64,000 nt of DNA, taken from positions 4,836,001 to 4,900,000 of the forward strand of contig CM069160.1 in NCBI GenBank assembly GCA_035221665.1. The letters are read 5' to 3'. The notes under the pieces are model-generated. The model saw only the letters and a program-made list of their open reading frames with translations. It ran no database searches and was not told the DNA's origin. The stretch's first letter is position 1; each line of letters opens with the position of its first letter. Of the stretch, positions 795-50,939 are shown piece after piece. The DNA comes from Okamejei kenojei (Eukaryota). A program made the translations under genes and the position numbers.

Positions 795-854
795 CCTTGA
801 TGTTGGTGAAGTTTGGCTCAGTTGCTGCTGTTGATGCGAGAGGTTGTGCATGAA

Positions 855-906
855 ATGGTTCTGTTCATCTTGCTGAGTTTCTTCTGTGTACAAGGGACTC
901 AAGCCG
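855..906 (+). CDS. MHC class I exon 1 (signal peptide [18 protein letters not shown])
   Basis: ATG in good context (gaaATGg), a hydrophobic 17-aa leader ending T-Q-A, and a consensus donor G|GTAAGT. Phase 1 matches the alpha1 acceptor. Confidence 0.8.
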
Positions 907-9900: not shown

Positions 9901-12900
9901 ATCGAAGATTTCGGCGAAAATCCACGCAGGTCACGGGGAGAACGTACTAACTCCGTACAGACAGCACCCACAGTCAGGATTGAAACCGGGTATCTGGCAC
10001 TGCAAACACTGTAAAAGGCAGCAACTGTGCCACTGTGCCGTCCTTATTGGTAACTTTATGTGATCTTATTTTGTTAGGATGCAAATTCTATGGGAATGCT
10101 TTCTCAAAGAGATAGATAATGATGTTAGAAATAACGAACTGCAGATGCTGGTTTGTACCAAAGTGTGTCACAAAATGCTGGAGTAACTCAATGGGTCAGA
10201 CAGAATCTCTGTAGAGAAAGGATGGGTGATGCTGGGTGAAGCTTCAGGTTGGGACCCTTCCTCAGACTGATGCTTCGGGTTTGGGGCCCTTCTTCAGACT
10301 AACCCTGCATGAGACTGAAGTAGGGTCTTGACACGAAGTGCCATCCAGTCTTTTTCTCCAGAGATGCTGCGGTCTTGGTGAGTTACTTTAGCACTTAGTG
10401 TCTAAGGTTGATAATGAGTTGTTCAATCCTGATTTTTTTTTTTTGTGATGTTAATTTCTGCACGTTCACAGGGCAGACTGTGAGAGTAAACAGTTGAATA
10501 ACTAGTCGAGCAGGAAATGTGTGGTATTTGAGGAAGTGTGAATGTGGGGCCTCACCGGTGAGATGATAGGGGAACTCCCTGACAAAGGAGAATGTGGTGA
10601 ACTATCAGAAAGTCACCAGGAGGTCATATCAAAGCAGAAGTTAAATGTTACATTGATAATTTTAGAGCCTGCTCTTGATGTACTGGCATGATGCAATCCG
10701 ATGTGGGCAACTTACTGTATATTGCAGCTCAAAATGATATAGAGATACAGCATGGGAACTGGCTCTTCAGCCCACCAGGTCCACGCTGAACAGCGATCCC
10801 CATACAGTAGCAATATCCTATAGACTAGCAACAATTTATAATCTTTACCAAAGCCTATTAAACTACAAACACGTCTTTGGAGTGTGGGAGGAAACTGGAG
10901 CACCCAGGGAAAACCCACAGGTCGAACGTAAAAACTCCACACAGACAGCACCCATGGTCAGGATTGAACCTGGCGGTCTCTTGTGCTGTAAGGCAGTAAC
11001 TCTACCGCTGTTCCACCGTCACCCTTTTGTGGGGGATCATGACAGAAGCCTCCTCGTGGCGATCCCTGGAACCGACGACACGATGCACTCTGTGACGCGT
11101 CGGGCGACCAATTCTGTCAACATGTTGGACGACGACAGGAGCCAACAGCGAGCTACATGTCGTCTGACACACGAGTGAATGAACCCCTGTTAGACTAATC
11201 AACTGAAGGTTACGACATAAATATGATGTGATGCAACTAATTGGGCGTGCAGCATAGAGAGTGCAGCACAGAAACAAGCCCTTTGACCCATCAAGTCCAT
11301 GCTAACCTTTTTGGTTCCTGATCTCTTTTTATCTTCCTGATATTTCCAATACCTACCCCTAGATTTTACTATTTAACGACACATGGAGTAATGTATGGTG
11401 GCCTGTGAACCAAATAACTGCCGTGACTTACATTTGTGGGTGGAATATCTGAATATCATATTATTTCCAAATGTTGATCAGTAAGGGCGGCACAGTGGGG
11501 CTGTGATAGAGTTGCTGCCTTAAAGTGCCAGTGCCCCAGGTCCGATCCTGACTATGGGTGCTGTCTGTAGGGAGTTTGTACATTCTCCTCATGACCAGTG
11601 TGGGTTTTCTCCAAGATCTTCACTTTCCTCCCACACTCCAAAGACGTACAGGTTTGTAGGTTAATTGGCTTGGTATAAATGTAAATTCTCCTTCGTGTGT
11701 AGGATAGTGTTAACGTGTGGACTCGTGCTGAAGGGCCTGTTTCCACACTGTATGTCTAAGCTAAACTAAAATAACCTAAGTTAGCTTGACATTTAAAATC
11801 ATATACAGCATAGAAACAGGCCCTTCAGCCCACCTTATCTATGCCGGCCAAGATGCCCCATCTACCCTTGACCCACCTACCTATATTTTAGCTTAATTTA
11901 ATTTATTATTAATGTCACGTGAAAATGTTTCGTGTTTGCTATCCAGTCAGTGAAAAGACTACATTACAATGAAGCCGTTCACAATATATAGATACAGGAT
12001 AAAGGCTATCATGTGCAGTGCAAATTAAGTCCAATTGGTGTTTTGCCGATTTCCCCCCAAACCTTTCCTATCCATAGAAATTTCTATTGCTTGACAATAA
12101 TTGTATTCTTTTATTTGTGTCTAGGGCCTCACACACTGATCTATTACTACACCCTGAACCACGGGAGTACTCATCTACCAGAATATAGTGTGGTGGGTGT
12201 TCTGGACGGTTGTGAGATACAGTATTATGACAAAAACATGGCCATTACAGTTCCAAGACAGAAATGGATGGCGGCTGCATTTGACAGGAGATACTGGGTA
12301 ACAAATACGGTTTCCGAAAATGGTTTCCATGGAATCATCAAAGGGCAAGTCGACGAGTGGATGCGGAGGCATAACGAAACAACAAGTTAGTTCATTCATT
12401 TGAATAAATTTGGATTGTGATCAATGTTAATAAAAAAATCTCTCAGAAATACCTCGCTGTGCCAGAGATCCAGGTTAGATCCTGACCTCGAGCAAGTTTA
12501 CACGTTCTCCCTGTGACCACACATATTTCCTCCAGGTGCTCCAGTTTTGTCCTATATCGTGTAAATGTGCAAGTTTGTAGGTTAATTGGGCTCTGTAAAT
12601 TGTTCTCGTTGTGCTCGTTGGGTGAGAATGTGGATAACATACTGTAGATGTGTAGGATTGAACTGCAGATGCTGGTTTACAGCACAGACACAAAATGCTG
12701 GAGTAACTCAGCGGGACAGGCAGCATCTCTGGATAGAAGACTCTTTGCATACCTTGGGTATTCATTATGAACACATATTCATCTATTCATGTTTCATGAT
12801 TAATTACTTTTTAAGACATTGCTTTTTGTTACCTCTTTGGTTACACATGAAACAAATTATATTTAATGTTTGACTCTGGACAGGGTAAGGTGTGTACGAT

Positions 12901-18900: not shown

Positions 18901-21900
18901 CAACTCCCCCTCCCATTTCCAATCTGATGTTTCTGTCCTGGGCCTCCTCCATTGTCAGAGTGAGGCCCAGCACAAATTGGAGGAACAGCACCTCATATTT
19001 CGCTTGGGCAGTCTACACTCCAGCGGTATGAACATTGACTTCTATAACTTTCGATAGCCCTTGATTTCTCTCTCCGTCCCCTCCCCCTTCCCAATTCTCC
19101 CACCAGTCTTACTGTCTCCGCCTACACTCTTATCTTTGTCCCTCCCCTGAACATCAGTCTGAAGAAGGGTCTCGACCCAAAACGACGCCCATTCCTTCTA
19201 TCGAGAGAAGCTGCCTGATCCGCTGAGTTACTCCAGCATTTAGTGTCTACCTTTGATTTTAACATCTGCAGTTCTTTCTTACACCTGGAGAATCAATGTG
19301 GAGAATGCTAACATGCAGGGGCACTTTGAAGTTAAGCAAGAAGGAGATGTTGGGTCACTTGAAGAGAAATGTGGATAAATCCCCAGGACAGAGGGGTGTA
19401 GTGGATGATGATAATAATAATAATCGTTGAAAACATTAGTGCCATGCTGGTTTTTGACTGGCACGATGACGGAGCAACACACATCTCTGTCTTCCATGCA
19501 GCTGGCAAGCTCCTCTTTTATCTCTACAGGTGGGTCTTCCATAAACATCTTCAGCATCATCTTGATTGGCCGACCCAGGTCTCGTCTTCCATGGGTGGGT
19601 TCCCACAGCACAACCTTGTTTGCTGACATTTCTTGGTGGCGGAGCCAGTGACCTGCGAGCCTCATCCTTCTCAACGTGATCTTCTCGGTCAGAGGTGGAG
19701 TCTCCCCATAGAGCTGGGTGTTGGTGATGTGGTCCCTCCAACTGACATTTTGAACTATTCTGAGCATTCGGATGTAGGTACCATCGAGAGACTTGGACAG
19801 TGCTGGAGTGAGAGTCCATGCCTCACACCCGTACAATAATATGGTCTCTACAGTTGCATGGAAGGCCGAATATTCAGACTGTAGTTCAGTGACAAGTAGA
19901 GTTCTGCAGGGGTCTGTCCTGTGACCCTTGCTACTTGCGACATATATAAATGACTAGGACCCTGGTGTTCAGAAATGACCCCAGTCATAACAATTAATCA
20001 AATAATGATTTTGTTTTTTCTTTCAGATTATCATTATGTTCAAGGACAGTTTGGTTGTGAGGTGAGCGATCACAGTCCCAATGTAGGGATATTGAAGTTG
20101 GCTTTTGATGGAAGAGATGCATTTAGTTTTGATAAGGACAAACTAAAGTGGACGGTGCATGACCCAATAGCTGAGACCTTCAAAGAGAAATGGGACAAGA
20201 ATGAAAAAATGAACCGTTATTTCAAGAGCTTGTTAGAAAATGACTGTGTGGATCTATGGCATACATACTACGCAATTGGAAAGACATACCTGACCAGAGA
20301 AGGTGAGTTCAGAACAAAGGATGTTGTTTTGTGATGGTAGGCAATTAGTAATATTTCACTGTTTTTGAGGCAATGAGTAATATTATCTCTGACCCAATCA
20401 TGACAGAGGGAAAGGTAATTCGGCCCATTGAGTCTATGCTAGTTTTCAATGCAATGTCGACGAACTGTTCCACAACTCTCTCTCACAACTTGCACTCAGC
20501 TCCCTCGGATTCTCCGTTCACTCAGTTCCACTACGGATAATTTGCAATGTCCGACTAGCTCACTGGCACGTTTTTGGTATATGGAACAAAACTGGATCAC
20601 ATGGAGGAAACCAACTGAGTCATAAGGTCATAAGTGATGGGTGCAGCATTAGAACATTCGGCCCATCAAGTCTACTCCGCCATTCAATCATGGCTGATCT
20701 ATCTCTCCCTCCTAATTCCATTCTCCTGCCTTCTCCCCATAACCCCTGACTTGCATACTAATCAAGAATCCATCTATGCCTTAAAAATATCCATTGACGG
20801 ATTCCAAAGCCTTCTGTGGCAAATAATTCCACAGAATCACCACCCTCTGACAAAATATATTCCTCCTCATCTCTTTCCCAAAAGAATGTCCTTTAATATT
20901 GAGACAATTACCTCCAGTCGTAGACTCTCCCACCAGTGGAGACATCCACTCTATCCAAGCCGTTCACTATTTGGTATGGTTCAATGAGGTCCCTCCTTAT
21001 TCTTCTAAAATCCAGCGAGTACAGGTCCACTGCCATCAAATGCTCATCATATGTTAACCCATTCATTCCTGGGATCATTCTTGTACACCTCCTCTGGACC
21101 CTCTCCAGAGCCAGCACATCCTTCCTCAGATATGGTGCCCACAATTGCTCACAATGCTCCAAATGTGGCTTGACCGATGCCTTATAGAACCTCAGCATTA
21201 CATCCCTGTTTGACAGGGAGAAAGTGTAATTGATGTCTTTCATATTAGTTAACCATGGATATACTTGACCACGTTTGACAGCCCCTAATACGATTGCATC
21301 TCTATCACACATCTCTATAGAGCATAGCGTTAAGCTTCGAAGGGCAACATTTACACGAGATGTGCAGGTCAAGTGTTTTTTGTACAGAGAGAGCTTGATA
21401 CCTAGAATGCGCTACCAGGAGTGGTGGTAGAGGAGGACATGATAATGGTGCTTAAGAAGGTTTTAGACAGGCTCGTGGATATGCAGCGAATACAAGGATA
21501 CGGATCACATGCGGGTAGTGGAGATTAGTTTTGATTTAGTTTAAAGATAGAGTATGGAAACAGGACCTATGGGCCACTGAGTCTGCACTGACCAGCAATT
21601 GCCCATTCACTATTTCTGTCCTACAAGCTGGGGACAATTTACAAAAGCCAATTAACCTGCATGTCTTTTGTATTTGGGAAGCAACCGGCGCCCCCAGAGA
21701 AAACCCACAGGTTGACATGTGGAACTGAGTTTGATAGGCTGCAACATGTCCAGACACAACATGTCCAAGGGAACGTACAAACACTGTCCAGACAGCACTC
21801 TAGTCAGGACCGAACCCGGGTCTCTGATGTAAGACAGCCACTCTATCACTGTGCCATTGTGTTGCGTTAGTTTAACTTGGTATCCTGTTCGACATGGACA

Positions 21901-24900: not shown

Positions 24901-27900
24901 CAATGAGATTGGTTGGAAGATCAGGACAACACCTTATCTTACATGAGAATCATTCAGTAGTCCAATAACAGTGGGGAAGAAGGTGTTCCTGAATTTAATG
25001 GTACGTGCTTTCAAACTTTCTTGTGTACTGTCTTAACAGGGAGCGTGCGATCCCTTTTAAACCACGTGGTTGGTTGATGGTGATGAAAGAGGCAAAATGG
25101 GGCAGATGTGGACAGTAACTTGGTGGTTGTAGTAGACTGAATAATATTTTGTGGTGAGTGACTGTGCAAGTTTTACTGAAGGTGAAAATAACCAACTTAC
25201 TGTCTTGTAGTTTCCCCTGAGGTCACTCTCGCTGCCCGCCCTGATGATCATTCAGTCCTGTACTGCACTGTGTTTGGATTTTACCCACCGGCTATCAATG
25301 TCAGCTGGTTGCAGAATGGTCAACATTTCTCTGAGACCAAATCTTCTGGGGTCATACCCAATAACGATGGAACATATCATCTAACGTCTGTCCTTGAGTA
25401 TGATCCGTATGATGGGAAACAGTATTCCTGTCATGTCGATCACAGCAGCCTGCCCGGTGGGAAGACCATCATCTGGGGTAAGAACATTAAATATTATTTA
25501 GTAGATAATCATTATCTTCTGTTGTTTCCATTTTAATCATTGTGACTACATCCCATATTCCAAGATGCTTAAACTTTATTTGTTTAGTGGTGTTGCTCTA
25601 AGCAATCACATAATCAGCACCCACTCTCCACTTGAGCAGAAGACTTTGTCAACAGAAAATTTATCAAAAGTAAATAAATAACTGATATACAAGGAAGGAG
25701 TATTTGGGATTCTCAGTGGTGGAACTGAAATCCATGAAAGGTACGTTTAAATAAAAAAAATAATCTTTCCTCATGATGTGATTAACAGCAAGGCACTGGG
25801 GGAGCACATGCCCCAATCCGAATCAGTGGTCTGAAGTGCAAATGATTGAGAGCTTCATGTTCCTTGGCATGAATACATCCAATATTCTGTCATGGACTGA
25901 CCACATAGCCAAGGAGGCACACCGGCACATCTACTTCCTCAGGAGACTGGGAATATTCATCATGTCTCTGGTGACTCCAGCAAACATCTACAGATGCCGC
26001 TTGAGAAAGCATGTTGTGAGTTGCATCACATCTTGATTTGGGAACTGCACTGCCCAAGACTGCAAGAATATACACAGAGTTAAAGATCATCACACAGGCC
26101 AGACTTCCTACTATTGACTCAATCTACACCTGGTTGCCTTGGAAAACGAGCCTTATCCCACCCCGGTCATTCCTCCTTCCTGCTCCCATCAGGCAATAGG
26201 TACAGAAAGTTAAAAATATGCACTGCCTGACTCAGGAACACCCCCTTTCCATCTGTTATCAGGCTTCGGAAGTGTCCTTCCAGAATGTATGTTTAATGCC
26301 CGATTCACCTCAACCTCATAACACATTGAATATTGTCTGTGGAACTGATGCGATACAATGTTGAGAACTATATTCTGTACTCTGTATCCTCCTCTTTGCT
26401 CTATCTATTGTTTTTGAGTTTTTTATTTATGTATAGTATCTAATTTGTTTGGATAGCATGCAAAAAAACCTTTTCACTGTATCTTGAAACATCTGGCATT
26501 AATTAAAACGAAACCTAATGAAGTAAGTTCTGTGACGCAAGTTACAGCTTCTGCAACGAAAAATATAACTGCCGGACAAACAGTGATCGTACCAATTTGA
26601 TTCCAGGTATGCTGCACTAACCTACACAAATGCTCACTTTTGAAGATTCCCTCGAACAATGCACAACTAAGGAATCTGATGTTTCACTCTGAAGACTGTT
26701 GACATACTCCGAAACTTAATTTCCAACCTATCTATCTATCATCAGCATTCTAGGCTACAGCACCATCAGTCCCTTCACCTGCTCTTAATGCCAACGATAA
26801 GTAGTTCACTTTCGTGCATTGATTCCCAACCTGCAGTTGCCGTTTCCCAACCTGAACACTCCTTTAAGACAACTCTCTGCTTGCTCTTAATTGTTTTTCC
26901 ATTCATGCTAATTATTACCCCCAATGTCATAAGCCATGTGCCTTTGCATCACTTGATCAGATATCTTATGAAACTCAAGATATTCTGGCGACATCTGGTG
27001 GTCAGACCACTTATTGCTAGAACCCTCGTCAGGGGAGCTGGGACTATCATGTGCTAATTATTTGTTCTGAAGAAGGGTCTTCGCCTATCTCCTTCGCTCC
27101 TTAGATGCTGCTGCAACCCTGGGACTATCATGTGACAGGGTTTTTCAGTCAGTCAACTGGGGGTACACAAAAGGCTGGAGAAACTCAGCGGGTGCAGCAG
27201 CATCTAAGGAGCGAAGGAGATAGGCGACGTTTCGGGTCGAGACCCTTCTTGTGTGCCCGATTACAACGGCAGGAACGTTGCGCAAATCCTTACTAAACGC
27301 GAGTGTGCCGAAACAGTTTATCTTAAAAAAACATTGATTTGTTCACGACGCTTGGACCTCTACATTTTAGAAACATAGAAACATAGAAAATAGGTGCAGG
27401 AGGAGGCCATTCTGCCCTTCGAGCCAGCACCGTCATTCATTGTGATCATGGCTGATCGGCCCCTATCAATAACCCGTGCAAATATATTGTATTTATTTTG
27501 TTTCTCATTCCAATTTTGTTACCTATTCTGCTTTTCCATCATTTTGTTTTTGAATTTTAGGCTGTGCACACCTGCAAACTACTGCTGCTCGAATATACAT
27601 TGTCTGCGGGTTCCTGTTGCATTTTCAAAGAATTCTAATCAATTTCTCAAACAAAGTTTGAAGAAGGGTCCCAAAACGAAATGTCAACTGTCCATGTGTA
27701 GGGAGATAGATGGACACACATTGCTGGAATAACTCAGCTGGTCAGGCAGCATCTCTGGAGAAAAGGAATAGCTGATGTTTCGGGTCACAATCCTTCTGAC
27801 TGAGTACATGTTCGCCAGAGATGTTGCCTATTCCGCTGAGTTACCCCGGCATTTTGTGTCTATCATGTATATTCTTTCCACTGACTGGTTAACACGTAAC

Positions 27901-30562
27901 AAAAGCCTTTCACTGTACCTCAATACTCGTGACAATAAACTAAACTAAAGCTTTTGTGTAAATCAGTATCTGCATCTCTTTCTTTCTAGAATTTTCCCAT
28001 TAATGCCCTGTTAATGCACTTTATTATTTTGTTATTATTAAATGTTCTGCATTACAGCATGAAATATCCAGCATTTTCCCCAAAACAGATGTTCGGTGAT
28101 ATAGGGTTAAAGCTTTCTGCTTTAACTTTCACCTTCTTTCTTGAATTAAGTTGTGGCTGTGATGGTCCCATAGATCATACAGTTGTACAGAACAGATATT
28201 GTCCCCTTTGCCATGCTGCAGAACTCCATGATTCAAAACAACATATTTATATACCTTGAAAAGCGCCAAAGATAGACACAAAATGCTGGAGTAACTCAGC
28301 GGTCAGGTAGCATCTCTGGAGAAAAGGAATAGGTGGCATTTCGGGTCGAGACCCTTCTTCATCCTGAAGTCTTCAGACAGTGCCAATCTATTTAGATGCA
28401 CAGCTTAACAATTGATTTGTAAAATGATGCATTCTTATTTTTCAGAAGGAAATAGGAAGAAAGACAGGCACATAGGCCTTATTGCCGTGTGTGTGCTGAT
28501 ATTACTGGCTATTGTCTTGGCAGTTATTGTTTGGTGGAGAAAAAAGAGGAGAGGTAAGATGGAAACACTGTGATGCACTGTTGCTAATAAAGTATTGGGC
28601 TTGAAGAAATGATTGATCTCAAGTAGGGTAAGGCAGCAGCTACACCTGAAATGCCTCGCCAGTCACCACTGTCAACTAGCCTTTGTGCTGTTGTTAAATG
28701 TTTTTGATAATCAGATATTTGAAAATTGTGAATTCAGAGTAACATAAATAGGTAGACATTATGGATTCACTGTGCCAAATCCTAGAGATATCATCGAAAG
28801 GTACAGCATACAAGCAGTCCTTTTGGCCCACTGAGTCCATGCGACCCACCAACCACCTGTTCTCATGAATTCTATCTTATTGCACCTTCTCATCCAGTCA
28901 CCCACCTACTAAGGGCAATTTACAGTGGTCAATTAAACTATACTTGTACCTGTCCAAGTGTGTTCTAAATGTTTTTTTTAATACCTGCCTCGACTCCTTC
29001 CCCTGGAATGTTCCATATTTCCACTTCCTATGGTTCCGAATAACTCGTTTCCTTCTCACCTTAAACCTAAGTCCTCTGGTTCTTGATTACACAAGGCTGG
29101 TTAAAAGATTCCGTGCATTCAATCTATCTGTTCCCCTTGATTTTATAAACCTCTATATGATCATCCCTCAGCCACTTGGATGCCAAAGAATAAAGTCCAA
29201 GCGTGCCCATCCTCTCCCTGAATCTCAGGCCCTGTTAATGACATCCTTCCGATAGTGGAGTGACCAACACTTAACGCAATACTCCATATGCGGCCGCACC
29301 AGCATCTTGTACAACTGTAGCAGAACATCCCAACTGTTTTATTCAGTACCTTGACATGTTATTGATGTTCATGATTATTCTGTTCTTTGTGCCTGGGCCA
29401 TTTTGACTTTGTCACATTTTACTTGGTTTATGATATTGTATAGGATTTGCAATCACACCTCCCAATTGACTAAAATTATCCCAATTAACTAAATGCCTAC
29501 TATGACATTTAACTTATTGCATTATATTCAGTAAAGGGTAGAAGCTGCAGTTTTTTAAAAAAAGGGCAGGTTTTTATTACACTCTATGTGGTGTGTGCCT
29601 GGGAAGCACTGCCAGGGATGGTGGCGTTTGGTGTGCACCTTCCTGGGTGCATGGAGATGCAGGGGTTGGAGGGACATGAATCATTTGCAGGCAGATGCTG
29701 CCTAACTGGTGTCTGTCCGACTGATCTGGAGGCATTTCAATGCGATCTGATCGTCAGGCAGGGAATACTTCCAGTGACCCAATGTTGCGGAGTCGCTGAA
29801 TTTTACGGTGCATGGGAATGCCCCTGTAATAGAGGAACAGGTCCGTTGTCCAACAATGTTTTTGCTGAACATGATGCAACTTGAGGCAGAGTGGCGCAGC
29901 TGATAGAGCTGCTGCCTCAGAGCGTCAGAGACATCAGTTCAATCCTAACCTCGGTTGTCGGCTGTGTGAAGTTTGCATGTTTTCCCCATGACCGCATGGG
30001 TTTCCACTGTACTCCAGTTTCCACACACATACCAAAGATGCCAGGGTTTATGGATTAATTGGTCTCTGTAATTTGACCCTAGTGAGGAAGCGAAAGTTGG
30101 AAACGTAGAACTTGTGTGGACGAAACTATTTGAAGGAGTATTGAGTTTTTTGTTTAGTTTAGAGAGAGAGCATTGAAACGGACACTTCGGCCCACTGAGT
30201 CCGCACCAACCAACGATCACCCACATAATATAGGGACACAAGTCAATTAACCTACATACCTGCACGTCTGTCTTTGGAATGTGGGAGGAAACTGGAGCAC
30301 CTAGAGAAAACCTATGCAGTCACAGGGAGAAGGTACAAATTCCGTACAGACATCACCCGTAGTCAGGATCAAATCCGGGTGTCTGGCCCTGTACCATTAT
30401 ATCTGGAAGGTGGATGTTATGTGGGATGGATCAACAGTTAAAGCGAATAAACAAGTTGCATCTTTCTGAGTTCTGTTCTCTGCCATTTCTTAGTTCTCTA
30501 ATATATAATTTCCCTCCTCAGATTATCAAAATATTCAACCAAACCAGAACGTGCACTGCTAA
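855..30562 (+). CDS. MHC class I heavy chain, probably a non-classical lineage (6-exon spliced model, 334 aa)
   Basis: Exons 855-906, 12125-12385, 20027-20302, 25211-25477, 28446-28553 and 30522-30562 join in one open frame (1005 nt including stop). All introns are phase 1 with GT-AG ends, the canonical class I layout. The first and last exons are less certain than the middle four. Confidence 0.9.
1170..2090 (+). mobile_element. Penelope-like retroelement 3' fragment (GIY-YIG endonuclease remnant plus terminal repeat)
   Basis: ORF 1528-1854 [30 protein letters not shown]...EQHLVFRSG...GMN is a decayed Penelope GIY-YIG domain, followed by the recurrent ccagagatgctgcctg...gagttactccagca repeat. 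Confidence 0.85.
2186..3730 (+). mobile_element. CR1-type LINE, truncated ORF2 (reverse transcriptase) and 3' end
   Basis: [51 protein letters not shown], with stops and deletions. 3745-3990 re-duplicates about 2930-3165. Confidence 0.9.
4520..6380 (+). repeat. Three tRNA-derived HE1/V-SINE-like SINE copies (about 4520-4765, 5535-5845, 6113-6380)
   Basis: Shared head gcacagtgg..cag..gtagag..gctgcctca...ggttcaatcc, body ggagttt..acgttctccccgtgacc and tail gaagggcctgtttcc. Confidence 0.8.
6417..6744. mobile_element. MITE (PIF/Harbinger-like) with TAA target-site duplication
   Basis: TIRs aagccttgtcccactgtacgagttcattcaa / ttgaatgaactcgcatcgtgggacagggcca. TAA at 6414-6416 and 6745-6747. Internal 2x repeat tcttcccgag..tacctgccgttagcat. 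Confidence 0.8.
7259..7291 (-). ncRNA. Minimal hammerhead-ribozyme-like motif
   Basis: Reverse complement reads tctgaagaagggtctcgacccgaaacgtcacc; core identical to 73-104. Confidence 0.5.
8089..8620 (-). mobile_element. CR1 LINE 3' fragment
   Basis: acatagaaacat tail plus ORF2 C-terminal sequence shared with 39396-40570. Confidence 0.75.
9730..11770. repeat. HE1/V-SINE-like copies (9730-10040 -, 10740-11020 -, 11485-11770 +)
   Basis: Same consensus. Further copies at about 17897-18165, 21535-21860, 23630-23915, 29885-30390, 42250-42540, 48913-49140, 52050-52385 and 61490-61800. Confidence 0.8.
12125..12385 (+). CDS. MHC class I exon 2 (alpha1 domain)
   Basis: Acceptor tgtctag|, donor |gttagt. 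[10 protein letters not shown]...VGVLDG...PRQKWM...RRYW...MRRHNETT shows H3, Y7, D29, Y59, R84 and the N86 glycosylation site. 261 nt. Confidence 0.95.
13130..13600 (+). mobile_element. CR1 LINE 3' fragment
   Basis: [31 protein letters not shown]. Confidence 0.75.
13688..14383. mobile_element. GC-rich MITE (PIF/Harbinger-like) with TAA TSD, inserted in a SINE
   Basis: Imperfect TIRs of about 65 bp: agggcctgtcccacttacgtgtccttgg... / ...caaggacaggtaagtgggacaggggtt. TAA at 13685-13687 and 14384-14386. Confidence 0.85.
15671..15966. mobile_element. Truncated MITE of the same TIR class
   Basis: taa|agcccctgccccactt left end and a CpG-rich body with gtagtc repeats. Right end not found; it abuts a CR1 tail. 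Confidence 0.55.
18495..19285 (+). mobile_element. Penelope-like retroelement 3' fragment
   Basis: ORF 18731-19057 [34 protein letters not shown]...EQHLIFRLG; same family as 1170-2090. Confidence 0.85.
19404..19865 (-). mobile_element. RTE/RTEX-like LINE 3' fragment
   Basis: YGCEAWTLT...[19 protein letters not shown]...[11 protein letters not shown]...[14 protein letters not shown] is the RTE-group C-terminus, ending in an (ATT)n(ATC)n microsatellite tail at about 19404-19423. Confidence 0.8.
20027..20302 (+). CDS. MHC class I exon 3 (alpha2 domain)
   Basis: Acceptor ttttctttcag|, donor |gtgagt. HYVQGQFGC...AFDGRD...KWT...KEKW...CVDLWHTY shows the C101-C164 pair, Q96, D119, G120, K146, W147 and Y171. 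276 nt. Confidence 0.95.
20620..21210 (-). mobile_element. CR1 LINE 3' fragment
   Basis: [36 protein letters not shown]. Confidence 0.8.
25211..25477 (+). CDS. MHC class I exon 4 (alpha3, C1-set Ig domain)
   Basis: Acceptor tcttgtag|, donor |gtaaga. VSPEVTL...[17 protein letters not shown]...PNNDGTY...[10 protein letters not shown] contains the Ig C1 GFYP and YxCxVxH signatures. Confidence 0.95.
25795..26480 (+). mobile_element. Rex1/Babar (L2-group) LINE 3' fragment, decayed
   Basis: ESFMFLG...[21 protein letters not shown]. Related fragments lie at about 47720-48720. Confidence 0.65.
26986..27003 (-). promoter_or_regulatory. Candidate CTCF site in MHC class I intron 4
   Basis: Reverse complement gaccaccagatgtcgcca closely matches the CTCF core CCACCAGRKGGCGC (one core mismatch). 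Motif match only. Confidence 0.35.
28446..28553 (+). CDS. MHC class I exon 5 (connecting peptide, transmembrane helix, basic stop-transfer)
   Basis: Acceptor atttttcag|, donor |gtaaga. [36 protein letters not shown], in frame with alpha3. Confidence 0.92.
30522..30562 (+). CDS. MHC class I candidate exon 6 (cytoplasmic tail [13 protein letters not shown])
   Basis: Polypyrimidine acceptor tttccctcctcag| in non-repetitive sequence. The phase-1 reading gives a YxxPhi motif right after the basic stretch. TAA at 30560-30562; possible ATTAAA signal at 30595-30600. No transcript evidence. Confidence 0.65.
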
Positions 30563-32198: not shown

Positions 32199-35100
32199 CT
32201 TAAACCTGGTTTTGCTGGTTCTTGATTACCCTACCCTGGGTAAAATAAATCCTGATCAATCGCCCTCATGATTTTAGAAAGCTCTCTAAGATCCCCAAAT
32301 TAAATGGTTTCAATTATAGATAGAGTAAGACTTTGTGGTTATTTCCAACAAGAATTTTAGACTAAAGAAAGGCCAGTGGAAGTACTTGGTCAAACAGCAT
32401 CTGTGGAGGCAAATGACATATACCAACATTTCAAGTCAAGGCACTGCATTAGATTTGAAGGAGAGGATGGCCAGATTCTAACAGCTTGAAGGGGGAATGG
32501 GGCAGAGGCTGGTAAGTGGCAGGTGGAATCAGCTGGGAAGGTGATGATGGGCAGATGGAGCAAAGTTGGTGTAGGGGTGGTTGTGGGAGAACAAATGAGC
32601 ACCAGTGGTATGGATAAGCTGAAATGTGAAAACTTTATATTCATACCATCATACACAGTAAGGTACCCAGGTGGATTATCAGATATTTTACTTAAAACTT
32701 TCAGTGCCCAAGGATAATGACAGATGGGTCAGTGTGAGAGTGGGAAGAGGTGTTAAAATACCATACAATGTCTCAGGATTCTCTTTACTTCAAAGGGTAC
32801 GTGCTCTACAAAATGGTTGACGTCTAAGCTAGTTTCTCCAAAGTAGAGAAGACCACAGTGTGAGCAGTGAATGCAGTAGGGAAATTTGAAAAAGGTGAAA
32901 GGTGAACCTCTGTCTCACTTGAAAAGTTTATTCTCCTGTTGTTCGCCTCTTCCTCCTCCTCCTCATACATGTTTCCATTTACCCATTATCCTCTCCCCAC
33001 CTGGTTCTACGTTTGATCTACCAGCCTCTGTCCCTATTCCTCCCTGATTGCTATATATGGGCAATCCATCCTCTTCCCTCACATGCCTGGTGCAGATTCT
33101 TGACCCTATTTGTGATATCAACCATTTGTCCCAATAATTTTGTTTGAGCCATTGAATGTTTTCAGTCTTCTTTTTTTAGATGCAGATTCCATTAGCTACA
33201 GTCATTATTGGATAGAATATATTTTGTTTTAACATTGCATTTAGTCTGAGACTCAGCACCAGTAAATGTTGTTACATGAAGCTTGGTTATTTGATGATGT
33301 CAAAACGTCTTGATTGTTTGAACTTTGTAGATTTCTAATCTAATGCATAGAATGTATCATCGATATGAATATAAACTTGTCCACAGTGATTGGCGGCACA
33401 GTGATCAAGTTCATTTTATGTGGCTGACTTGGTACAAGTGCTGCTCTTGATATTTCACCAAATAATAGTTGCCTGTAGAATGTGCTTGATGAATAGACCA
33501 TTGAGTGCAAGATTTTTGGAAATAGATGGGCATGAAATCCAAGTAAGCACATTGGATTGCACCCTGTTTTATAGTGGCTTCATGTTGCAAAGTAAAGGCA
33601 AGATATATGGAATATGCAAGATATAATATGAAAGATATAATATGCAAGGCAAAAAATAAATTGTTGTTAAGAAAATGTATTGCCATCCATTTATTTGCAA
33701 CAGCATCAATCACAGTTATCTTACGTCAAAGTTGATTTTGTATGGTTTTTTTTAAAAGAAAGGGAACAAAATGACCAAAATGAATTGGTAGTGAAAGCAA
33801 TACAAGGTTGTAGTGGAAACAAGTGTGTAGAAACAGGCCACTCTGCCTATCCCGTCAATACTGCTGCATATAGTCCACATGAGCCTCTTCCCACATGCGA
33901 TCTGCAAAATAGTTGGCTAGTCTATGCTGGATTCTCCAATGTAGAACCGACTGTTCCTTTCTCCTTTGTGTTTGCCCAGCCTTCCCCTAAATGCAATTCA
34001 TTCATCTGGATCCTCATTGTCACCAGTATTGGGTGGGAGAGGAGGAGAGGGAGCATTCTCTGTAGAATTCCCTGCTGGATTTTATGGTGGAAATGTTTTC
34101 ACCAATGTGATTCATTTAAAACCTTTATGTATCACCCTTCAGCCACTTCTCAAAGGGGTGGAGGGCAGGGGGTGGAAGACTTACCCAGGGAGATTCGATG
34201 ACCATGTTTTATTTATTTTATCCAAAAAAGTTTTAAATATAGGTTAGTACATTTTCAGTGCTGTGCTTAAAAAAATACAGTAGTATTCTTTTTTTGCATC
34301 TTGAGTTAACACATTGAAACAGCAATGGATGGCGTGTTCAGAATTTGTTTTCTGATTTGTCCTCGCTTTGTGAACACCAAACCAATGTATGCATCTGTCT
34401 TATCTGCAAAAAAGGCATAGGCACCAGGGTATCTTTTCCTTTTAAGTTATCATGCTCTTCGATGCAGAGGAAATGTGGCCAGGATAAATACAAAAATGTT
34501 GAAATGTAGAATATAAAATTAATAGGAATTCAGGCATTTGAGCCTCAACTATTATTCCATGTGATAAATTATGACCCACATTTATTACCTTGATCCTTTT
34601 ATTTCTCCTCATCATCTGTGATCCTTTGACCATACGAATAACATATAACTGTTTGAATAAATGTAATGATCTGTGTTCAATTGCTTCCAGTGGTATAACA
34701 TTCCACACGTTCATCATTCTGTGGAAGAAGTAATCGCTCTTCGTCTCAACTTTATGCCTGAGCTTCAGATTCTGACTACTGGGTCCTGAACTGACCTGAT
34801 TTCCCTCTTGAATATATGTATACGTACATATATACACGTNNNNNNNNNNNNNNNNNNNNNNNNNNNNNNNNNNNNNNNNNNNNNNNNNNNNNNNNNNNNN
34901 NNNNNNNNNNNNNNNNNNNNNNNNNNNNNNNNNNNNNNNNNNNNNNNNNNNNNNNNNNNNNNNNNNNNNNNNNNNNNTTTCATATTGTTTACCGTGTGCT
35001 ATGCTTACGTGTAGCGAGTAATGTCACTGTACTATCTGGGACATATGACAATAAAACACTCTTGACTCTCATGAATCTGTACAGACCTATATGAATTTTG

Positions 35101-36414: not shown

Positions 36415-36796
36415 ACAGGAAAGCAGACTATTATCTAAATGGTGGCCGATTAGGAAAAGGGGAGATGCAGCGAGACCTGGGTGTCATGGTACACCAGTCA
36501 TTGAAAGTAGGCATGCAGGTGCAGTAGGCAGTGAAGAAAGCGAATGGCATGTTAGCTTTCATAGCAAAAGGATTTGAGTATAGGAGCAGGGAGGTTCTAC
36601 TTCAGTTGTATAGGGTCTTGGTGAGACCACACCTGGAGTATTGCGTACAGTTCTGGTCTCCAAATCTGAGGAAGGACATTATTGCTATAGAAGGAGTGCA
36701 GAGAAGGTTCACCAGACTGATTCCTGGGATGTCAGGACTGTCTTATGATGAAAGACTGGATAGACTTGGTTTATACTCACTAGAATATAGGAGATT
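36415..36796 (+). mobile_element. CR1 LINE ORF2 fragment
   Basis: KKANGMLAFI...LYRVLVRPHLEYCVQFWSP...VQRRFTRLIPG. Confidence 0.85.
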
Positions 36797-38985
36797 AACC
36801 ATATAACCATATAACAATTACAGCACGGAAACAGGCCCTCTCGGCCCTTCCAGTCCGTGCCGACCATTTGTTTTCCCCTAGTCCCATCTACCTGCACTCA
36901 GACCATACCCCTCCATTCCCTTCACGTCCATATACCTATCCACTTTACTTTTAAATGTTAAAATCGATCCTGCCTCCACCACTTCTGCTGGAAGCTCATT
37001 CCACACAGCCACCACCCTCTGAGTAAAGAAGTTCCCCCTCATGTTACCCATAAACTTCTGTCCCTTAATTCTCATGTCATGCCCTCTTGTTTGAATCTTC
37101 CCTACCCTCAATGGGAAAAGCTTATCCACGTCAACTCTGTCTACCCTTTCATCATTTTAAAGACCTCAATCAAGTCCCCCCTTAACCTTCTGCGCTCCAA
37201 AGAATAAAGACCTAACTTGTTCAACCTTTATCTGTAACATAGTTGCTGGAACCCTGGCAACATTCTAGTAAATCTCCTCTGTACTCTCTCTATTTTGTTG
37301 ACATCCTTCCTATAATTAGGCGACCAAAATTGTACACCATACTCCAGAATTGGTCTTACCAATGCCTTGCACAATTTTAACATTACTTCCTACTCCTATA
37401 TTCAATGCTCTGATTTATAAAGGCCAGCACACCAAAGGCTTTCTTTACCACCCTATCTACATGCGATTCCACCTTCAGGGAACTATGCACAGTTATTCCT
37501 CGATCCCTCTGTTCCACGGCATTCCTCAATTCCCTACCATTTACCATTTACGTCCTATTTTGATTTGTCCTGCCAAGATGTAGCACTTCACACTTAACAG
37601 CATTAAACTCCATCTGCCATCTTTCAGCACACTTTTCCAAATGGCCCAAATCTCTCTGTAGACTTTGAAAATCTACTTCATTATCCACAACACCACCTAT
37701 CTTAGTATCATCTGCATACTTACTTATCCAATTTTCCACCCCATCATCCAGATCATTGATGTACACGACAAACAACAGTGGACCCAACACAGATCCCTGA
37801 GGCACTCCACTGATCACCGGCTTCCAACCTGACAAACAGCCATCCACCATTACTCTCTGACATTTCCCATTCAGCCACTGTTGAATCCATCTTGCTACTC
37901 CGCCATTAACACCCAAAGATTGAACCTTCTGAACCAACCTTCCATGGGGAACCTTGTCAAAGGCCTTACTGAAATCCATATAGACAACATCCACTGCTTT
38001 ACCCTCATCAATTTCCCTAGTCACCGCTTCAAAAAAATTCAAGAAGGTTTGTCAAACATGACCTTCCAGGCACAAATCCATGTTGACTGTTCCTGATCAG
38101 ACCCTGTTTATCCAGATGCTTATATATATTATCTCTAAGTATCCTTTCCATTAATTTGCCCACCACTGACGTCAAACTAATAGGTCTATAATTGCTAGGT
38201 TTATTCTTTGAACCCTTCTTAAACAATGGAACAACATGCGCAGTACGCCAATCCTCCGGCACTATTCCCGTTTCTAATGACATTTGAAATATTTCTGTCA
38301 TAGCTCCTGCTATTTCTACACTAACTTCCCTCAATGTCCTAGGGAATATCCTGTCAGGACCTGGAGACTTATCCACTTTTATATTTTTCAAAAGTGTCAG
38401 TACTTCCTCCTCTTTGAATCTCATAGTTTCCATAGCTACTCTACTTTTTTCCCCTTACCTCACAGAGTTCAATATCCTCCTTAGTGAATACCGAAGAAAA
38501 GAAATTGTTCAATATCTCCCCCATCTCTTTTGGCTCTGCAGATAGCTGTCTATTCTGGTTCTCTAATGGTCCAATTTTATCCCTTGTTATCCTTTTGCTA
38601 TTAATATAGCTGTAGAAACCCTTTGGATTTACTTTCACCTTTCTTGCCAAAGCAACGTCATATCTTCTTTTAGCCTTCCTAATTTCTTTCTTAAGATTCT
38701 TTTTACATGCTTTATACTCCTCTAACACCTCACTTAATCCATGCCTCCTATAATTATTGTAGATATCTCTCTTTTTTCGAAACAAGTGTCCAATTTCCCT
38801 TGAAAACCATGGCTCTTTCCAATTTTTACTATTTCCTTTCAACCTAACAGGGACATAAAGATTTTGTACTCTTACAATTTCCCCTTTAAATGTCCTCCAT
38901 TTCTCTTCTACATCCTTCCCATGAAACAAAGTGTCCCAATTCACTCCTTAAAATCCTTACGCATTCCCTCAAAGTTAGCCTTTTG
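36797..38985 (-). mobile_element. Young CR1 LINE, 5'-truncated (about 2.2 kb)
   Basis: Frameshifted ORF2 pieces: [44 protein letters not shown]; accatata repeat tail. Confidence 0.92.
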
Positions 38986-39395: not shown

Positions 39396-41840
39396 ACATA
39401 GAAAATAGGTGCATGAGGAGGCCATTTGGCCCTTCAAGCCTGCACCGTCTTTCATTTTGATCATGGCTGATCATCCACAATCAGTAAACCGTGCCTGCCT
39501 TCTCCCCATATCCCTTGATTCTGCTAGCCCTCTGGAGCTCTATCTAACTCTCTTTCAAATTTGTTTCAGTGAATTGGCCTCTACTGCCTTCTGTGGCAGA
39601 GAATTTCCACAAATTCACCACACTTTGTGTGAAAAAGGTTTTTCTCATCTCAGTTTTAAATCGCCTCCCACTTGATTCTTGGACTGTGGCCCCGGGTTCT
39701 GGACTCCCCCATCATTGGGAATTTATTTCCTGCATCTAGCTTGTCCAGTCCTTTTATAATTTTATTAATTTCTATAAGATCCCATCTCATCCTTCTAAAT
39801 TCCAGTAAATACAAGCCCACTCTTTCCAATATTTCCACATACGACTGTCCCGCAATCCAGGGGATTAACCTCGTGAATCTACGTTGCACTGCTTCAATAG
39901 CAAGGATGTCCTTCTTCAAATTGGGAGATGGAAACATAGAAAAATAGAATTTAGGTGCAGGAGCAGGCCATTCGGCCCTTTGAGCCTGTACCGCCATTCA
40001 ATATGATCATGGCTGATCATCCAACTCAGTATCCTGTACCTGCCTTCTCTCCATACCCCCTGATACCTTTAGCCACAAGGGCCATATCTAACTCCTTAAA
40101 CTGTGACCCCTTGTCCTGGACTTCCCCAACATCGGGAACAATCTTCCTGCATCTAGCCTGTCCAACCCCTTAAGAATTTTGTAAGTCTCTAGAAGATCTC
40201 CCCTCAATCTCCTAAAATCCAGCGAGTACAAGCCAAGTCTATCCAGTCTTTCTTCATATGGAAGTCGTGCCATCCCAGGAATCAGTCTGGTGAACCTTCT
40301 CTGTACTCCCTCTATGGCAAGAATGTTTTTCCTCAAGTTAGGAGACCAAAACTATACGCAATACTCCAGGTGTGGCCTCACCAAGACCCTGTACAACTGC
40401 AGTAGAACCTCCCTGCTCTTGTACTCAAATCCTTTTGCTATGAATGCCAACATACCATTCGCTTTCTACACAGCCTGCAGCACCTACATGCCTAATTTCA
40501 ATGACTGGTGTACCATGACACCCAGGTCTCGCTGCATCTCCCCATTTCCTAATCGGTCACCATTCAAATAATAGTCTACCTTCCTGTTTTTGCCACCAAA
40601 GTGGATAACCTCACATTTATCCACATTATACTGCATCTGCCATGCATTTGGCCACTCACCCAGTCAATCAAAGTCATCCTGCAGCCTCCTAGCATCCTCC
40701 TCACAGCTAACACTGCCCCCCAGCTTCGTGTCATCCGCAAACTTCGAGATGTTGCATTTAATTCCCTCGTCCAAATCATTAATGTATATTGTAAATAGCT
40801 GGGGTCTCAGCACCGAGCCTTGCGGCACCCCACTAGTCACTGTCTGCCATCCTGAAAAGGACCCGTTCACTCCTACTCTTTGCTTCCTGTCTGCCAGCCA
40901 GTTCTCTATGCACATCAATACCGAGCCACCAATACCGTGTGCTTTAAGTTTGTATACCAATCTCTTGTGTGGGACCTTGTCGAAAGCCTTCTGAAAGTCC
41001 AGATACAACACATCCACTGCTTCTCCCTTATCCACTCTACTGGTTACATCCTCAAAAAATTCAATAAGATTCGTCAGACATGATTTACCCTTCGTAAATC
41101 CATGCTGACTTTGTCCAATGATTTCACCACTTTCCAAATGCGCTGCTATCCCATCTTTAATAATTGACTCTAGCAATTTCCCCACTACCGATGTTAGACT
41201 AACTGGTCTGTAATTCCCCGTTTTCTCTCTCCCTCCCTTTTAAAAAAGTGGGGTTACATTAGCTACCCTCCAATCCTCAGGACCTACTCCAGAATCTAAA
41301 GAGTTTTGAAAAATTATCACTAAGGCATCTGCTATTTCTGGGGCTACTTCCTTAAGTAATTTAAGGCATCTGCTATTTCTGGGGCTACTTCCTAAATGCT
41401 GCATACAATCCTCCAGAATGTGGTCTCACCAGAGTCTGTACAACTGCAGAAGGACCTATTCACTCCTGTACTCAAATCCTCTCGTTATGAAGGCCAACAT
41501 CCCATTAGCTTTTTCACTGGCTGCTGTACCTGCATGCTTACTTTCAGTGACTGGTGTACAATGATACCCAGGTCTCGTTGCGCTTCCCTTTTTCCTAATC
41601 TTACACCACTGACATAATATTCTGTCTCCTTGATCTTACTGCCAAAGTGGATAACCTATCATGTATCTACATTATGCATGGCAGATGCAGTATCTGCGCA
41701 CTCACTCAACCTGTCCGAGTCACCCTGCAACCTCCTAGCATCCTCTTCGCAGTTCACACTGCCACCCAGCTTTGTGTCATCTGCAAATTTGCTAGTGTTA
41801 ATTTTAATCCCATCATCTAAATCATTAATATATATTGTAT
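39396..41840 (-). mobile_element. Stack of CR1 LINE fragments (second subfamily)
   Basis: [21 protein letters not shown] and FADDTKLGG (twice); acatagaaaa-type tails at about 39396 and 39933. Confidence 0.9.
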
Positions 41841-50037: not shown

Positions 50038-50939
50038 TTACATCCGCACCAGTTTCAAGAGATTACTCAAAAACCGGGTTACATGGCTAATCGCGTTCTT
50101 CACCTCCTCTCTGAATTTTTTCTGTGTCATTCCGTAGATACACGTGTTGGCGCAGGAGTTGACATAGATAAGTAGGACACCCACCTCATTGGCGATATAT
50201 GAGGGACTCGTATGATTTCCATCGGCGGGACTGACAGTGACTCGAGTGCAGACGAAGGTCACAGTTTCCGTTGTCCACAGCAGTATATAGACGCCGGACA
50301 CAGTGAAGAGTAAAACTATGGATTTACGCCGATTCTCCGCCTCGGTGTCATTGCCTTCCAGCCCTTTCAGCCGCCGGCGGACCCTGCTGGCCGCTACGGT
50401 GTTCCTGACCGTCAGACCGTTGAAGAATAGGATCAGAAGGAAAGGGAGGAATGAGAGGGAGATGCTACACATCCAGGAGAACATGATCCACCAGATGGAG
50501 GTCAGATAGGCGGCTTTGGGCCAGCACCCCCAGTTCACATTGTCCTTGGTGAAGCGCGGCTCGTACATGAACAAAAAGGGGATGTACTTTATGCAGCTCA
50601 GCGCACACATGGACACAATGACTGTGACGGCCGTCCTATCCGTGCAATATGTGAGTCTCAGCTTCGGGCAGCAAATGCTGACAAAACGGTCAAAGGTGAA
50701 AGACACGGTTAACCAGACGGAGTAGTCCAGGGTGACGATCCGCAGGTAAACGTCGGACGGACACACTGCGCTGAGGGAGAGGAAAGAGTTCGGGTTGTAG
50801 TAACCGTAGATTCCTTGCAGCAACACGTGGAAGATGATCACCAGCAGACCGGACATTGCCATCGCCAACATGTAACGCGTGATTCCTTTGGTGAGACCAC
50901 ACTTTCCCCGGCACAGGACCGCAGCCGTCAGTACGTTCG
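50038..50939 (-). CDS. GPR139-like class A GPCR, exon 2 (TM1 second half to C-terminus)
   Basis: Seven-TM hydrophobic pattern: ANVL, CGLTKGITRYMLAMAMSG, SVWLTVSFTFDRFVSICCP, FLLILFFN, ENRRKSIVLLF, NSCANTCIY. Acceptor cttcctccag| at 50940. Motifs match the GPR139/GPR142-like group. Confidence 0.9.

What the first reader, a model, noticed from the sequence alone, without database searches (positions are those of the whole stretch)
28446..30562. MHC class I chain with a CD1b-like YQNI endosomal sorting tail
Seen: splicing the TM exon to the acceptor at 30521 gives [20 protein letters not shown]. Established: YxxPhi motifs bind AP-2/AP-3 adaptors, and the human CD1b tail is RRRSYQNIP, with the same basic run, spacing and YQNI tetrapeptide. 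Inference: this cartilaginous-fish class I molecule may load cargo in endosomes or lysosomes rather than the ER, either convergently with CD1 or as an ancestral trait. The ectodomain keeps several peptide-anchor residues that CD1 lacks, so the combination of groove and tail is the notable part. The exon is missing from the ORF track.
Basis: partly seen in the sequence, partly recalled or inferred. Interest (0 to 1): 0.85.

Follow-up and report, generated by a model that had tools for sequence, protein, structure and literature searches.

The report
Skate UGA class I sorting tail
The tiny last exon is real and gives this skate nonclassical MHC class I gene a CD1-like tyrosine sorting tail that rays and sharks have kept since they split. 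The gene belongs to the already named, reportedly lipid-binding UGA lineage, and its trafficking has never been tested.

Summary
Observation confirmed. TM exon 28446-28553 joined to the acceptor at 30521/30522 reads ...[20 protein letters not shown]. All six coding exons are open, phase 1 and GT-AG. RefSeq models of two other skates carry the same tail, as do three full-length proteins from 1.4-3.5 kb assembled contigs, which can only be spliced transcripts because this gene spans 30 kb.

A Y-x-x-(I/V) motif sits 5-7 residues after the membrane span in 9 of 9 batoid and 8 of 10 shark species examined. Sharks end exactly at Y-N-x-V/I.

Its alpha1 and alpha2 exons match PDB 9CH4, "shark nonclassical MHC class I, UGA" (released March 2026), far better than any other solved chain. 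A 2025 review calls UGA CD1-like and lipid-binding, citing a personal communication. So the CD1 analogy is not new, although I found no paper that describes the tail.

The tail tyrosine aligns with the conserved Y-x-x-A tyrosine of shark classical class I, which suggests an inherited tyrosine retuned to a canonical sorting signal.

Trafficking is untested. The RNA-read test on this genome could not be run.

The scan noted similar CD1-like class I genes 83 kb and 171 kb upstream in this genome.

Verdict: new member of a known kind, moderate interest.

The parts
834..906 (+). Leader exon ([24 protein letters not shown] plus 1 base), with donor gtaagt at 907
   Evidence: tblastn of skate orthologues P0154 and P0001 matches 834-935.
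12125..12385 (+). Alpha1 exon (G)[13 protein letters not shown]...RRHNETT, phase 1 at both ends
   Evidence: Pfam MHC_I. Boundaries. Best PDB match is 9CH4 (UGA) at E 1.4e-36, against 1.9e-10 for the next chain.
20027..20302 (+). Alpha2 exon (N)[10 protein letters not shown]...YLTRE, phase 1 at both ends
   Evidence: Pfam MHC_I at 6e-15. Boundaries. 9CH4 scores E 2.6e-34, against 7.6e-14 for the next chain. It nests in the batoid clade of the family tree.
25211..25478 (+). Alpha3 (Ig C1-set) exon
   Evidence: Pfam C1-set at 2.8e-16. Boundaries. 88-91% identical to skate orthologues.
28446..28553 (+). Connecting peptide, transmembrane span and basic stop-transfer run (..[27 protein letters not shown]), with donor gtaaga at 28554
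   Evidence: tblastn of orthologues. Same exon end in all family members.
30522..30562 (+). Last coding exon: (D)[12 protein letters not shown] plus stop. Acceptor ttccctcctcag at 30510-30521.
   Evidence: 12 of 13 residues identical to the L. erinacea tail found in RefSeq and in transcript-sized contigs.
30524..30535 (+). Codons of the Y-Q-N-I tyrosine-based motif. The tyrosine is the seventh residue after the membrane span.
   Evidence: The motif is conserved as YQNI, YQTI, YENI or YESI in batoids and as YN(A/V/T/I)(V/I) in sharks.

Best explanation
This is the terminal coding exon of a skate gene of the UGA lineage of nonclassical MHC class I, an elasmobranch lineage whose shark member has been crystallised and is reported to bind lipids like CD1d.

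The exon adds a very short cytoplasmic tail after the basic stop-transfer run. The core of that tail, D-Y-Q-N-I, is a canonical Y-x-x-hydrophobic sorting signal placed 7 residues from the membrane.

The most likely mechanism has four steps. The heavy chain assembles with beta2-microglobulin in the ER and reaches the surface. The mu subunit of AP-2 binds the tyrosine motif and internalises it through clathrin pits. It then cycles through endosomes, and possibly reaches late endosomes or lysosomes through AP-3, as CD1b and mouse CD1d do. There it can exchange its cargo before returning to the surface.

Shown here: the exon, its use in related skates, lineage membership, and conservation of the motif across rays and sharks. 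Inferred: adaptor binding, endosomal routing and cargo exchange.
For: Gene anatomy:
- All exons are phase 1 with GT-AG sites.

Use of the junction:
- RefSeq models of A. radiata and L. erinacea carry it.
- So do three full ORFs on contigs of 1.4-3.5 kb, although the gene spans about 30 kb here.

Conservation of the motif:
- Skates have YQNI or YQTI, and 9 Rhinoraja paralogues all keep YQTI.
- The sawfish and Mobula have YENI; stingrays have YESI.
- Sharks of five orders end in YNAV, YNVI, YNTV, YNIV or YNVV.
- Flanking residues vary.

Orthology:
- The family tree follows the species tree, and the window nests among the batoids with 98/99 support.

Lineage:
- The window's alpha1 and alpha2 exons match 9CH4 at E 1e-36 and 3e-34, against 1e-10 and 1e-13 for the next chains.
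- 9CH4 is titled 'shark nonclassical MHC class I, UGA'.
- Stegostoma P0172, whose tail is RRQRGYNVI, is close to 90% identical to 9CH4 by my count from the printed alignment.

Literature:
- UGA is described as CD1-like and lipid-binding (PMC12562908).
- In CD1b, CD1c and CD1d the same kind of short basic tail with YXXZ drives recycling to intermediate and late endosomes (PMC5002277; PMC11481681; PMC5002281).
- From established knowledge (Bonifacino and Traub 2003), lysosomal YXXO signals lie 6-9 residues from the membrane, often at the C-terminus. This fits the shark tails especially.
Against: - No trafficking, adaptor-binding or expression data exist for any UGA molecule in what I could read.
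- A few family members lack the motif: Pristiophorus has AFQIY, Rhincodon has GYSLT or GRQVFL, one Heptranchias isoform ends in DAA, and two Pristis and one Hemitrygon paralogues differ.
- Grimholt et al. warn that transport routes cannot be predicted with certainty from sorting motifs (PMC4364491).
- Lipid binding by UGA rests on a personal communication in a review.
- The family is multi-copy in skates, so this copy could be a weakly expressed paralogue.
Confidence: 0.6

Rival explanations
1. The tyrosine is simply the tail tyrosine that all class I molecules inherit, the counterpart of the classical Y-x-x-A such as human Y320. It does what it does in classical class I: modest internalisation, a role in cross-presentation, or phosphorylation. 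There is no CD1-type specialised endolysosomal loading pathway.
For: MAFFT aligns the UGA tyrosine with the tyrosine of the Triakis scyllium classical UAA tail ...KTGYNPAKTSD. Classical-type tails from sturgeon (DYSKA), giant salamander (GYAAA) and a snake (NYNSA) show the same Y-x-x-A. The groove keeps 6 of the 8 peptide-terminus anchors.
Against: UGA differs systematically from the classical tail. Residue +3 is I or V rather than A, which makes a canonical AP-binding motif. The tyrosine lies 5-7 rather than 10-11 residues from the membrane. The serine-rich distal tail is absent, and shark tails end at the motif. UGA is reported to bind lipids (PMC12562908).
Confidence: 0.2
2. The motif serves another tyrosine-dependent function, such as basolateral sorting in epithelia through AP-1B or phosphotyrosine signalling by SH2 docking, rather than delivery to antigen-loading compartments.
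For: Y-x-x-hydrophobic motifs are also basolateral signals (established knowledge). The CD1d tail is needed for retrograde signalling in intestinal epithelium (PMC11481681). Skate YQNI and sawfish and Mobula YENI fit a pY-x-N Grb2-type site.
Against: N at +2 is not conserved: Rhinoraja has YQTI, stingrays have YESI and sharks have YNxV. The residue at -2 is R, so it is not an ITIM. Only the Y and the hydrophobic +3 residue are conserved, which is the adaptor-binding signature.
Confidence: 0.1
3. In this particular genome the copy is a silent or decaying paralogue, and the tail exon, although homologous, is not used. The motif then has no function at this locus.
For: The family is expanded in skates, with at least 10 RefSeq proteins on one Rhinoraja chromosome, and the scan noted further CD1-like class I genes nearby. 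No RNA run holding the alpha3 exon was found.
Against: All six coding exons are open with canonical splice sites, both disulfide cysteine pairs and the N-glycosylation site. Each exon is 86-92% identical to expressed orthologues, and no lesion was seen.
Confidence: 0.07

Closest known systems
Shark UGA nonclassical MHC class I (PDB 9CH4, released 2026-03-18), described with UFA as CD1-like in PMC12562908
   Same: Same lineage. The skate orthologue P0154 is 58% identical to 9CH4 over the ectodomain. The window's alpha1 and alpha2 exons hit it 20 or more orders of magnitude better than any other chain. The family tree is orthologous across sharks and rays.
   Different: The crystallised construct ends before the membrane span, so it says nothing about the tail. 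Skates carry many copies rather than one or a few. Batoid tails have 8 extra residues after the motif, ending in an invariant Cys.
CD1b, CD1c and CD1d cytoplasmic tails (huCD1b RRRSYQNIP, pig CD1d RRRVYQNIQ)
   Same: A very short tail, a basic run directly after the membrane, then Y-Q-N-I or a similar Y-x-x-I/V close to the C-terminus (PMC5002277 Table 2; PMC5002281). The ectodomain is also reported to bind lipid.
   Different: It is not a CD1 family member by sequence. No CD1 chain is among the 60 best PDB sequence matches or the 50 best Foldseek matches, which are UGA, MR1, classical class I and ZAG. It keeps 6 of 8 peptide-terminus anchors. Adaptor binding is untested.
Classical class I tail tyrosine (shark UAA GYNPA; human Y320 from established knowledge)
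   Same: A tyrosine at the start of the exon after the TM exon aligns with the UGA tyrosine.
   Different: The classical motif has Ala at +3, lies further from the membrane, and is followed by a serine-rich tail.
Teleost class I with endosomal sorting motifs (Atlantic cod clade 1, stickleback U genes)
   Same: MHC class I heavy chains carry tyrosine or dileucine sorting motifs in the tail, proposed to route them to endosomes (PMC3760826; PMC4364491).
   Different: Those are lineage-specific additions to long tails of peptide-binding U genes. Here the motif is the whole tail and has been conserved since the shark-ray split.
Lysosomal membrane protein signals (LAMP1 GYQTI-COOH type; established knowledge, not tested here)
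   Same: The shark tails (RRQRGYNVI-COOH, RRRRAYNAV-COOH) and Rhinoraja YQTI share the short distance from the membrane and the C-terminal placement.
   Different: Batoid tails are not C-terminal. The glycine before the tyrosine occurs only in the orectolobiform sharks (Stegostoma, Rhincodon).

Membership tests
UGA lineage of elasmobranch nonclassical MHC class I | Sequence closest to the named and crystallised shark UGA rather than to classical UAA or other class I | tested here: met
   Window alpha1 exon: 9CH4 at 1.4e-36, next chain at 1.9e-10. Alpha2 exon: 2.6e-34 against 7.6e-14. Entry title.
UGA lineage of elasmobranch nonclassical MHC class I | Orthologues in both sharks and rays that form one clade apart from classical class I | tested here: met
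   In the alpha2-exon tree, the 22 family rows and the window exon group apart from the UAA, sturgeon and salamander outgroups (that fork 85/90). The batoid clade holding the window has 98/99 support.
UGA lineage of elasmobranch nonclassical MHC class I | Single or low copy number and MHC linkage, as stated in PMC12562908 | tested here: inconclusive
   At least 10 RefSeq proteins lie on one Rhinoraja chromosome, and scan notes record further CD1-like class I genes 83 and 171 kb away. No classical MHC gene lies in this window.
UGA lineage of elasmobranch nonclassical MHC class I | Lipid bound in the groove | not testable with these tools
   Only a personal communication in a review. My AF2 model was poor, with pLDDT 62.
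CD1 family | Clusters with CD1 sequences | tested here: not met
   No CD1 chain appears among the best 60 phmmer matches or the best 50 Foldseek matches.
CD1 family | Loss of the conserved peptide-terminus anchors | tested here: not met
   Y7, Y59, R84, K146, W147 and Y171 are kept. Only T143F and Y159L differ. This is read against the Triakis UAA alignment and the anchor list in PMC4364491.
CD1 family | Short tail with a tyrosine-based recycling motif near the C-terminus | tested here: met
   [18 protein letters not shown] here. CD1 tails are listed in PMC5002277 and PMC5002281.
Y-x-x-hydrophobic (AP mu-subunit) sorting signals | Tyr, two arbitrary residues, then a bulky hydrophobic residue, in a cytosolic segment | tested here: met
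   YQNI directly follows a 22-residue hydrophobic span and a basic run.
Y-x-x-hydrophobic (AP mu-subunit) sorting signals | Conservation of Y and of the +3 residue while neighbouring residues vary | tested here: met
   17 of 19 species. Residue -1 is D, A, G or E; +1 is Q, E or N; +2 is N, T, S, A, V or I; +3 is I or V.
Y-x-x-hydrophobic (AP mu-subunit) sorting signals | Binding to AP-2 or AP-3 and tyrosine-dependent internalisation | not testable with these tools
   No adaptor sequence was available by reference for complex prediction, and the tail is shorter than the tool's 30-residue minimum.
Classical MHC class I (UAA) | All eight peptide-terminus anchors | tested here: not met
   T143F and Y159L.

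The most novel reading that the evidence does not exclude
The CD1-type pathway, in which a beta2m-associated class I-like molecule is pulled into endolysosomes by a short Y-x-x-I/V tail to sample lipids, already existed in the common ancestor of sharks and rays and perhaps of all jawed vertebrates. Its sorting signal was made from the tail tyrosine that classical class I still carries as Y-x-x-A. If so, the CD1 tail motif, the UGA tail motif and classical Y320 would be one homologous element retuned by a single +3 change and by truncation.
Probability: 0.2. Interest if true: 0.75.

Novelty: new member of a known kind. Interest (0 to 1): 0.45.

Why it matters
CD1 genes are known only from reptiles, birds and mammals, and when endosomal lipid presentation arose is an open question. 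A shark and ray lineage reported to bind CD1d-type lipids also carries a conserved CD1-type sorting tail. That adds the trafficking half of the CD1 phenotype, and simple tail-chimera experiments could test it. It also suggests how such a tail could be derived from the ordinary class I tail. The lineage, its structure and its CD1-likeness are already known to specialists, and tyrosine motifs in fish class I tails have precedents. The gain is therefore incremental.

Tried and rejected

The transcript-sized contigs could therefore not be aligned to the window.

Exons were searched one by one by reference, and full-length database orthologues stood in for the whole protein.

4. The alternative tail of L. 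erinacea isoform X5 (AGEFDVH...), which comes from read-through fusions with the downstream GPR139-like gene, has no tblastn match in this window. I rejected it as an alternative last exon here.

5. ITIM and Grb2-type readings of the tyrosine were rejected because the -2 and +2 residues are not conserved.

6. The AlphaFold model of the orthologue was poor (pLDDT 62). It was used only to retrieve the 9CH4 title, and no groove analysis was attempted.

7. Literature searches for a primary paper on shark UGA or UFA, or for 9CH4, found none in the held library. PMC7002201 is not held.

8. Complex prediction was not used, because no adaptor sequence was available by reference and the tail is under 30 residues.
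Full report
**1. The observation**

- After an acceptor cag at 28443-28445, the exon 28446-28553 encodes a connecting peptide, a 22-residue hydrophobic span and a basic run (..[27 protein letters not shown]). It ends with one extra G before the donor GTAAGA.
- A strong acceptor (ttccctcctcag) ends at 30521.
- In phase 1 the next exon reads [13 protein letters not shown], with a stop at 30560-30562.

The rest of the gene is intact and uses phase 1 throughout:
- leader exon 834-906
- alpha1 exon 12125-12385
- alpha2 exon 20027-20302
- alpha3 exon 25211-25478

All have GT-AG introns, both disulfide cysteine pairs and the N-E-T glycosylation site.

By itself the motif is not statistically remarkable. 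22 of 427 AG dinucleotides in the 7.4 kb downstream (5%) would give Y-x-x-hydrophobic within 12 residues if used as acceptors.

**2. Is the exon used?**

I could not test this on the window's own species.
- The run search with the alpha3 exon found only partial holders, none on record as RNA.
I worked beside those places afterwards and masked them in scripts.
Exons were searched separately by reference.

A phmmer search with the alpha2 exon found a 90% identical Leucoraja erinacea protein. Its 90% cluster holds these members:
- Amblyraja radiata XP_032898133.1, ending ...WWRKKRRDYQNIPPNQNVPC
- L. erinacea XP_055521885.1, ending ...[20 protein letters not shown]
- three further full-length 334-aa proteins with the same end, on contigs of only 3455, 1992 and 1435 bp

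The gene spans about 30 kb here, so those contigs can only be spliced transcripts. This is an inference, but a strong one. The window's tail is 12 of 13 identical to the Leucoraja tail.

The alternative long tail of L. erinacea isoforms X1-X5 comes from read-through into a downstream GPR139-like gene. It has no counterpart in this window.

**3. Conservation**

A search with the Amblyraja protein recovered the family in rays and sharks.

| Group | Tail after the basic run |
|---|---|
| Amblyraja, Leucoraja | DYQNI.. |
| Rhinoraja (9 paralogues) | DYQTI.. |
| Pristis | AYENI.. |
| two Mobula species | DYENI.. |
| Hemitrygon, Hypanus | DYESI.. |
| Heptranchias | DYNIV (end) |
| Heterodontus | AYNAV (end) |
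| Stegostoma | GYNVI (end) |
| Scyliorhinus (two species) | DYNTV, DYNIV (end) |
| Cetorhinus | DYNVV (end) |
| Carcharodon | DYNIV (end) |
| Mustelus | EYNAV (end) |

- All batoid tails are followed by eight more residues ending in Cys.
- Exceptions are Pristiophorus (AFQIY..), Rhincodon (GYSLT or GRQVFL), one Heptranchias isoform and three batoid paralogues.
- Counting the window, 17 of 19 species keep the tyrosine with I or V at +3, while positions -1, +1 and +2 vary. This is the signature of an adaptor-binding Y-x-x-hydrophobic signal.
- The tyrosine is 5-7 residues from the membrane.
- A tree of the alpha2 exon follows the species tree and puts the window inside the batoid clade with 98/99 support. 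The motif therefore goes back at least to the shark-ray split, roughly 250-300 million years ago by my own knowledge.

**4. What the gene is**

- The Amblyraja orthologue matches PDB 9CH4 at E 9e-118 and 58% identity. The next chains are MR1 and classical class I, at around 1e-48 to 1e-44.
- Foldseek gives the title of 9CH4 as "Crystal structure of shark nonclassical MHC class I, UGA", released 2026-03-18.
- The window's own alpha1 and alpha2 exons match 9CH4 at 1.4e-36 and 2.6e-34. The next chains score 1.9e-10 and 7.6e-14.
- Stegostoma P0172, with the tail RRQRGYNVI, is close to 90% identical to 9CH4 by my count from the printed alignment.

A 2025 review states, as a personal communication from M. 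[quoted passage not shown] It adds that their crystal structure and mass spectrometry suggest lipids like those bound by human CD1d (PMC12562908). An earlier paper mentions UFA in the same sense (PMC10751288).

The gene is therefore a skate member of an already named lineage, not a new kind of class I. I found no paper in the held library that describes the UGA tail.

**5. Comparison with CD1 and with classical class I**

- The human CD1b tail is RRRSYQNIP. CD1b, CD1c and CD1d tails in many mammals are short, basic and carry YXXZ, which drives recycling to intermediate and late endosomes. CD1a lacks the motif and stays out of late compartments (PMC5002277; PMC5002281; PMC11481681). The resemblance in length, basic run, spacing and tetrapeptide is real.
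- Membership in CD1 is not supported. No CD1 chain is among the best sequence or fold matches.
- Six of the eight peptide-terminus anchors listed in PMC4364491 are retained. T143F and Y159L are the changes.
- The UGA tail tyrosine aligns with the tyrosine of the classical shark UAA tail (Triakis ..KTGYNPAKTSD..). Other classical-type tails show the same Y-x-x-A. UGA looks like that element with A replaced by I or V, moved 3-4 residues closer to the membrane, and with the serine-rich distal tail removed. This is a short alignment and a weak inference. It favours "inherited and retuned" over pure convergence.

**6. Mechanism and rivals**

Best reading (0.6): the tail is a functional tyrosine-based signal that internalises UGA through AP-2 and routes it through endosomes, perhaps to lysosomes, where cargo is exchanged. 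All of those steps are inferred.

Rivals:
- It is the ordinary class I tail tyrosine with classical-type function (0.2).
- It serves basolateral sorting or signalling (0.1).
- This copy is a silent paralogue (0.07).

Grimholt et al. caution that routes cannot be predicted with certainty from such motifs. Tyrosine and dileucine motifs in cod and stickleback class I are precedents.

**7. Verdict**

Both sequence-level refutation tests were passed, and function is untested.
- Novelty: a new member of a known kind.
- The earlier scan noted two similar CD1-like class I genes, 83 kb and 171 kb upstream in this genome. This is one copy of a local family.
- Interest is moderate. The conserved tail supplies the trafficking half of the CD1-like picture of UGA and is easy to test, but specialists working on UGA probably know it already.

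Noticed in passing
window 50038-50970 (-) and 62029-62948 (-): Two GPR139-like receptor genes lie downstream on the opposite strand. The second is split into two overlapping ORFs (62673-62948 and 62029-62688), which suggests a frameshift. In L. erinacea the neighbouring GPR139-like gene is fused to the class I gene in RefSeq isoforms X1-X5. These look like read-through or model artefacts.
   Followed up: partly
window 30536-30559; proteins P0154, P0164-P0167, P0188, P0191: All batoid tails carry an 8-residue extension after Y-x-x-I, ending in an invariant C-terminal Cys (..NQNVHC, ..NQNRRC, ..NQNLRC, ..HRNVNC). Shark tails stop right after the motif. A C-terminal cysteine could be lipid-modified, as the cysteine in the CD1a tail is, but this was not examined.
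   Followed up: no
proteins P0164, P0178-P0186 (Rhinoraja longicauda): At least ten UGA-type RefSeq proteins lie on one 41.5 Mb contig. The lineage is therefore expanded in skates, unlike the 'single- or low-copy' description in the review. Scan notes report more CD1-like class I genes 83 kb and 171 kb upstream of this window.
   Followed up: partly
proteins P0202 (Scyliorhinus torazame) and P0205 (Cetorhinus maximus): Annotated isoforms skip the transmembrane exon and join alpha3 directly to D-Y-N-x-V. This predicts a soluble form and confirms the shared phase of the exons.
   Followed up: no
They were left out of all later searches and masked in scripts.
   Followed up: no
window 36531-38944, 40088-41185, 45240-46627 and elsewhere: Several reverse-transcriptase ORF fragments of retroelements and many short interspersed repeats fill the introns and flanks. 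N runs (assembly gaps or masked stretches) occur near 34840-35000, 53200-53900 and 58300-58730.
   Followed up: no
protein P0019 (L. erinacea XP_055486430.1, same contig as UGA paralogue P0157): A second, divergent class Ib gene (41% identical in alpha2) sits next to a UGA copy in Leucoraja. Its predicted tail shows no Y-x-x-hydrophobic motif. It could belong to another lineage such as UFA, but it was not identified.
   Followed up: no
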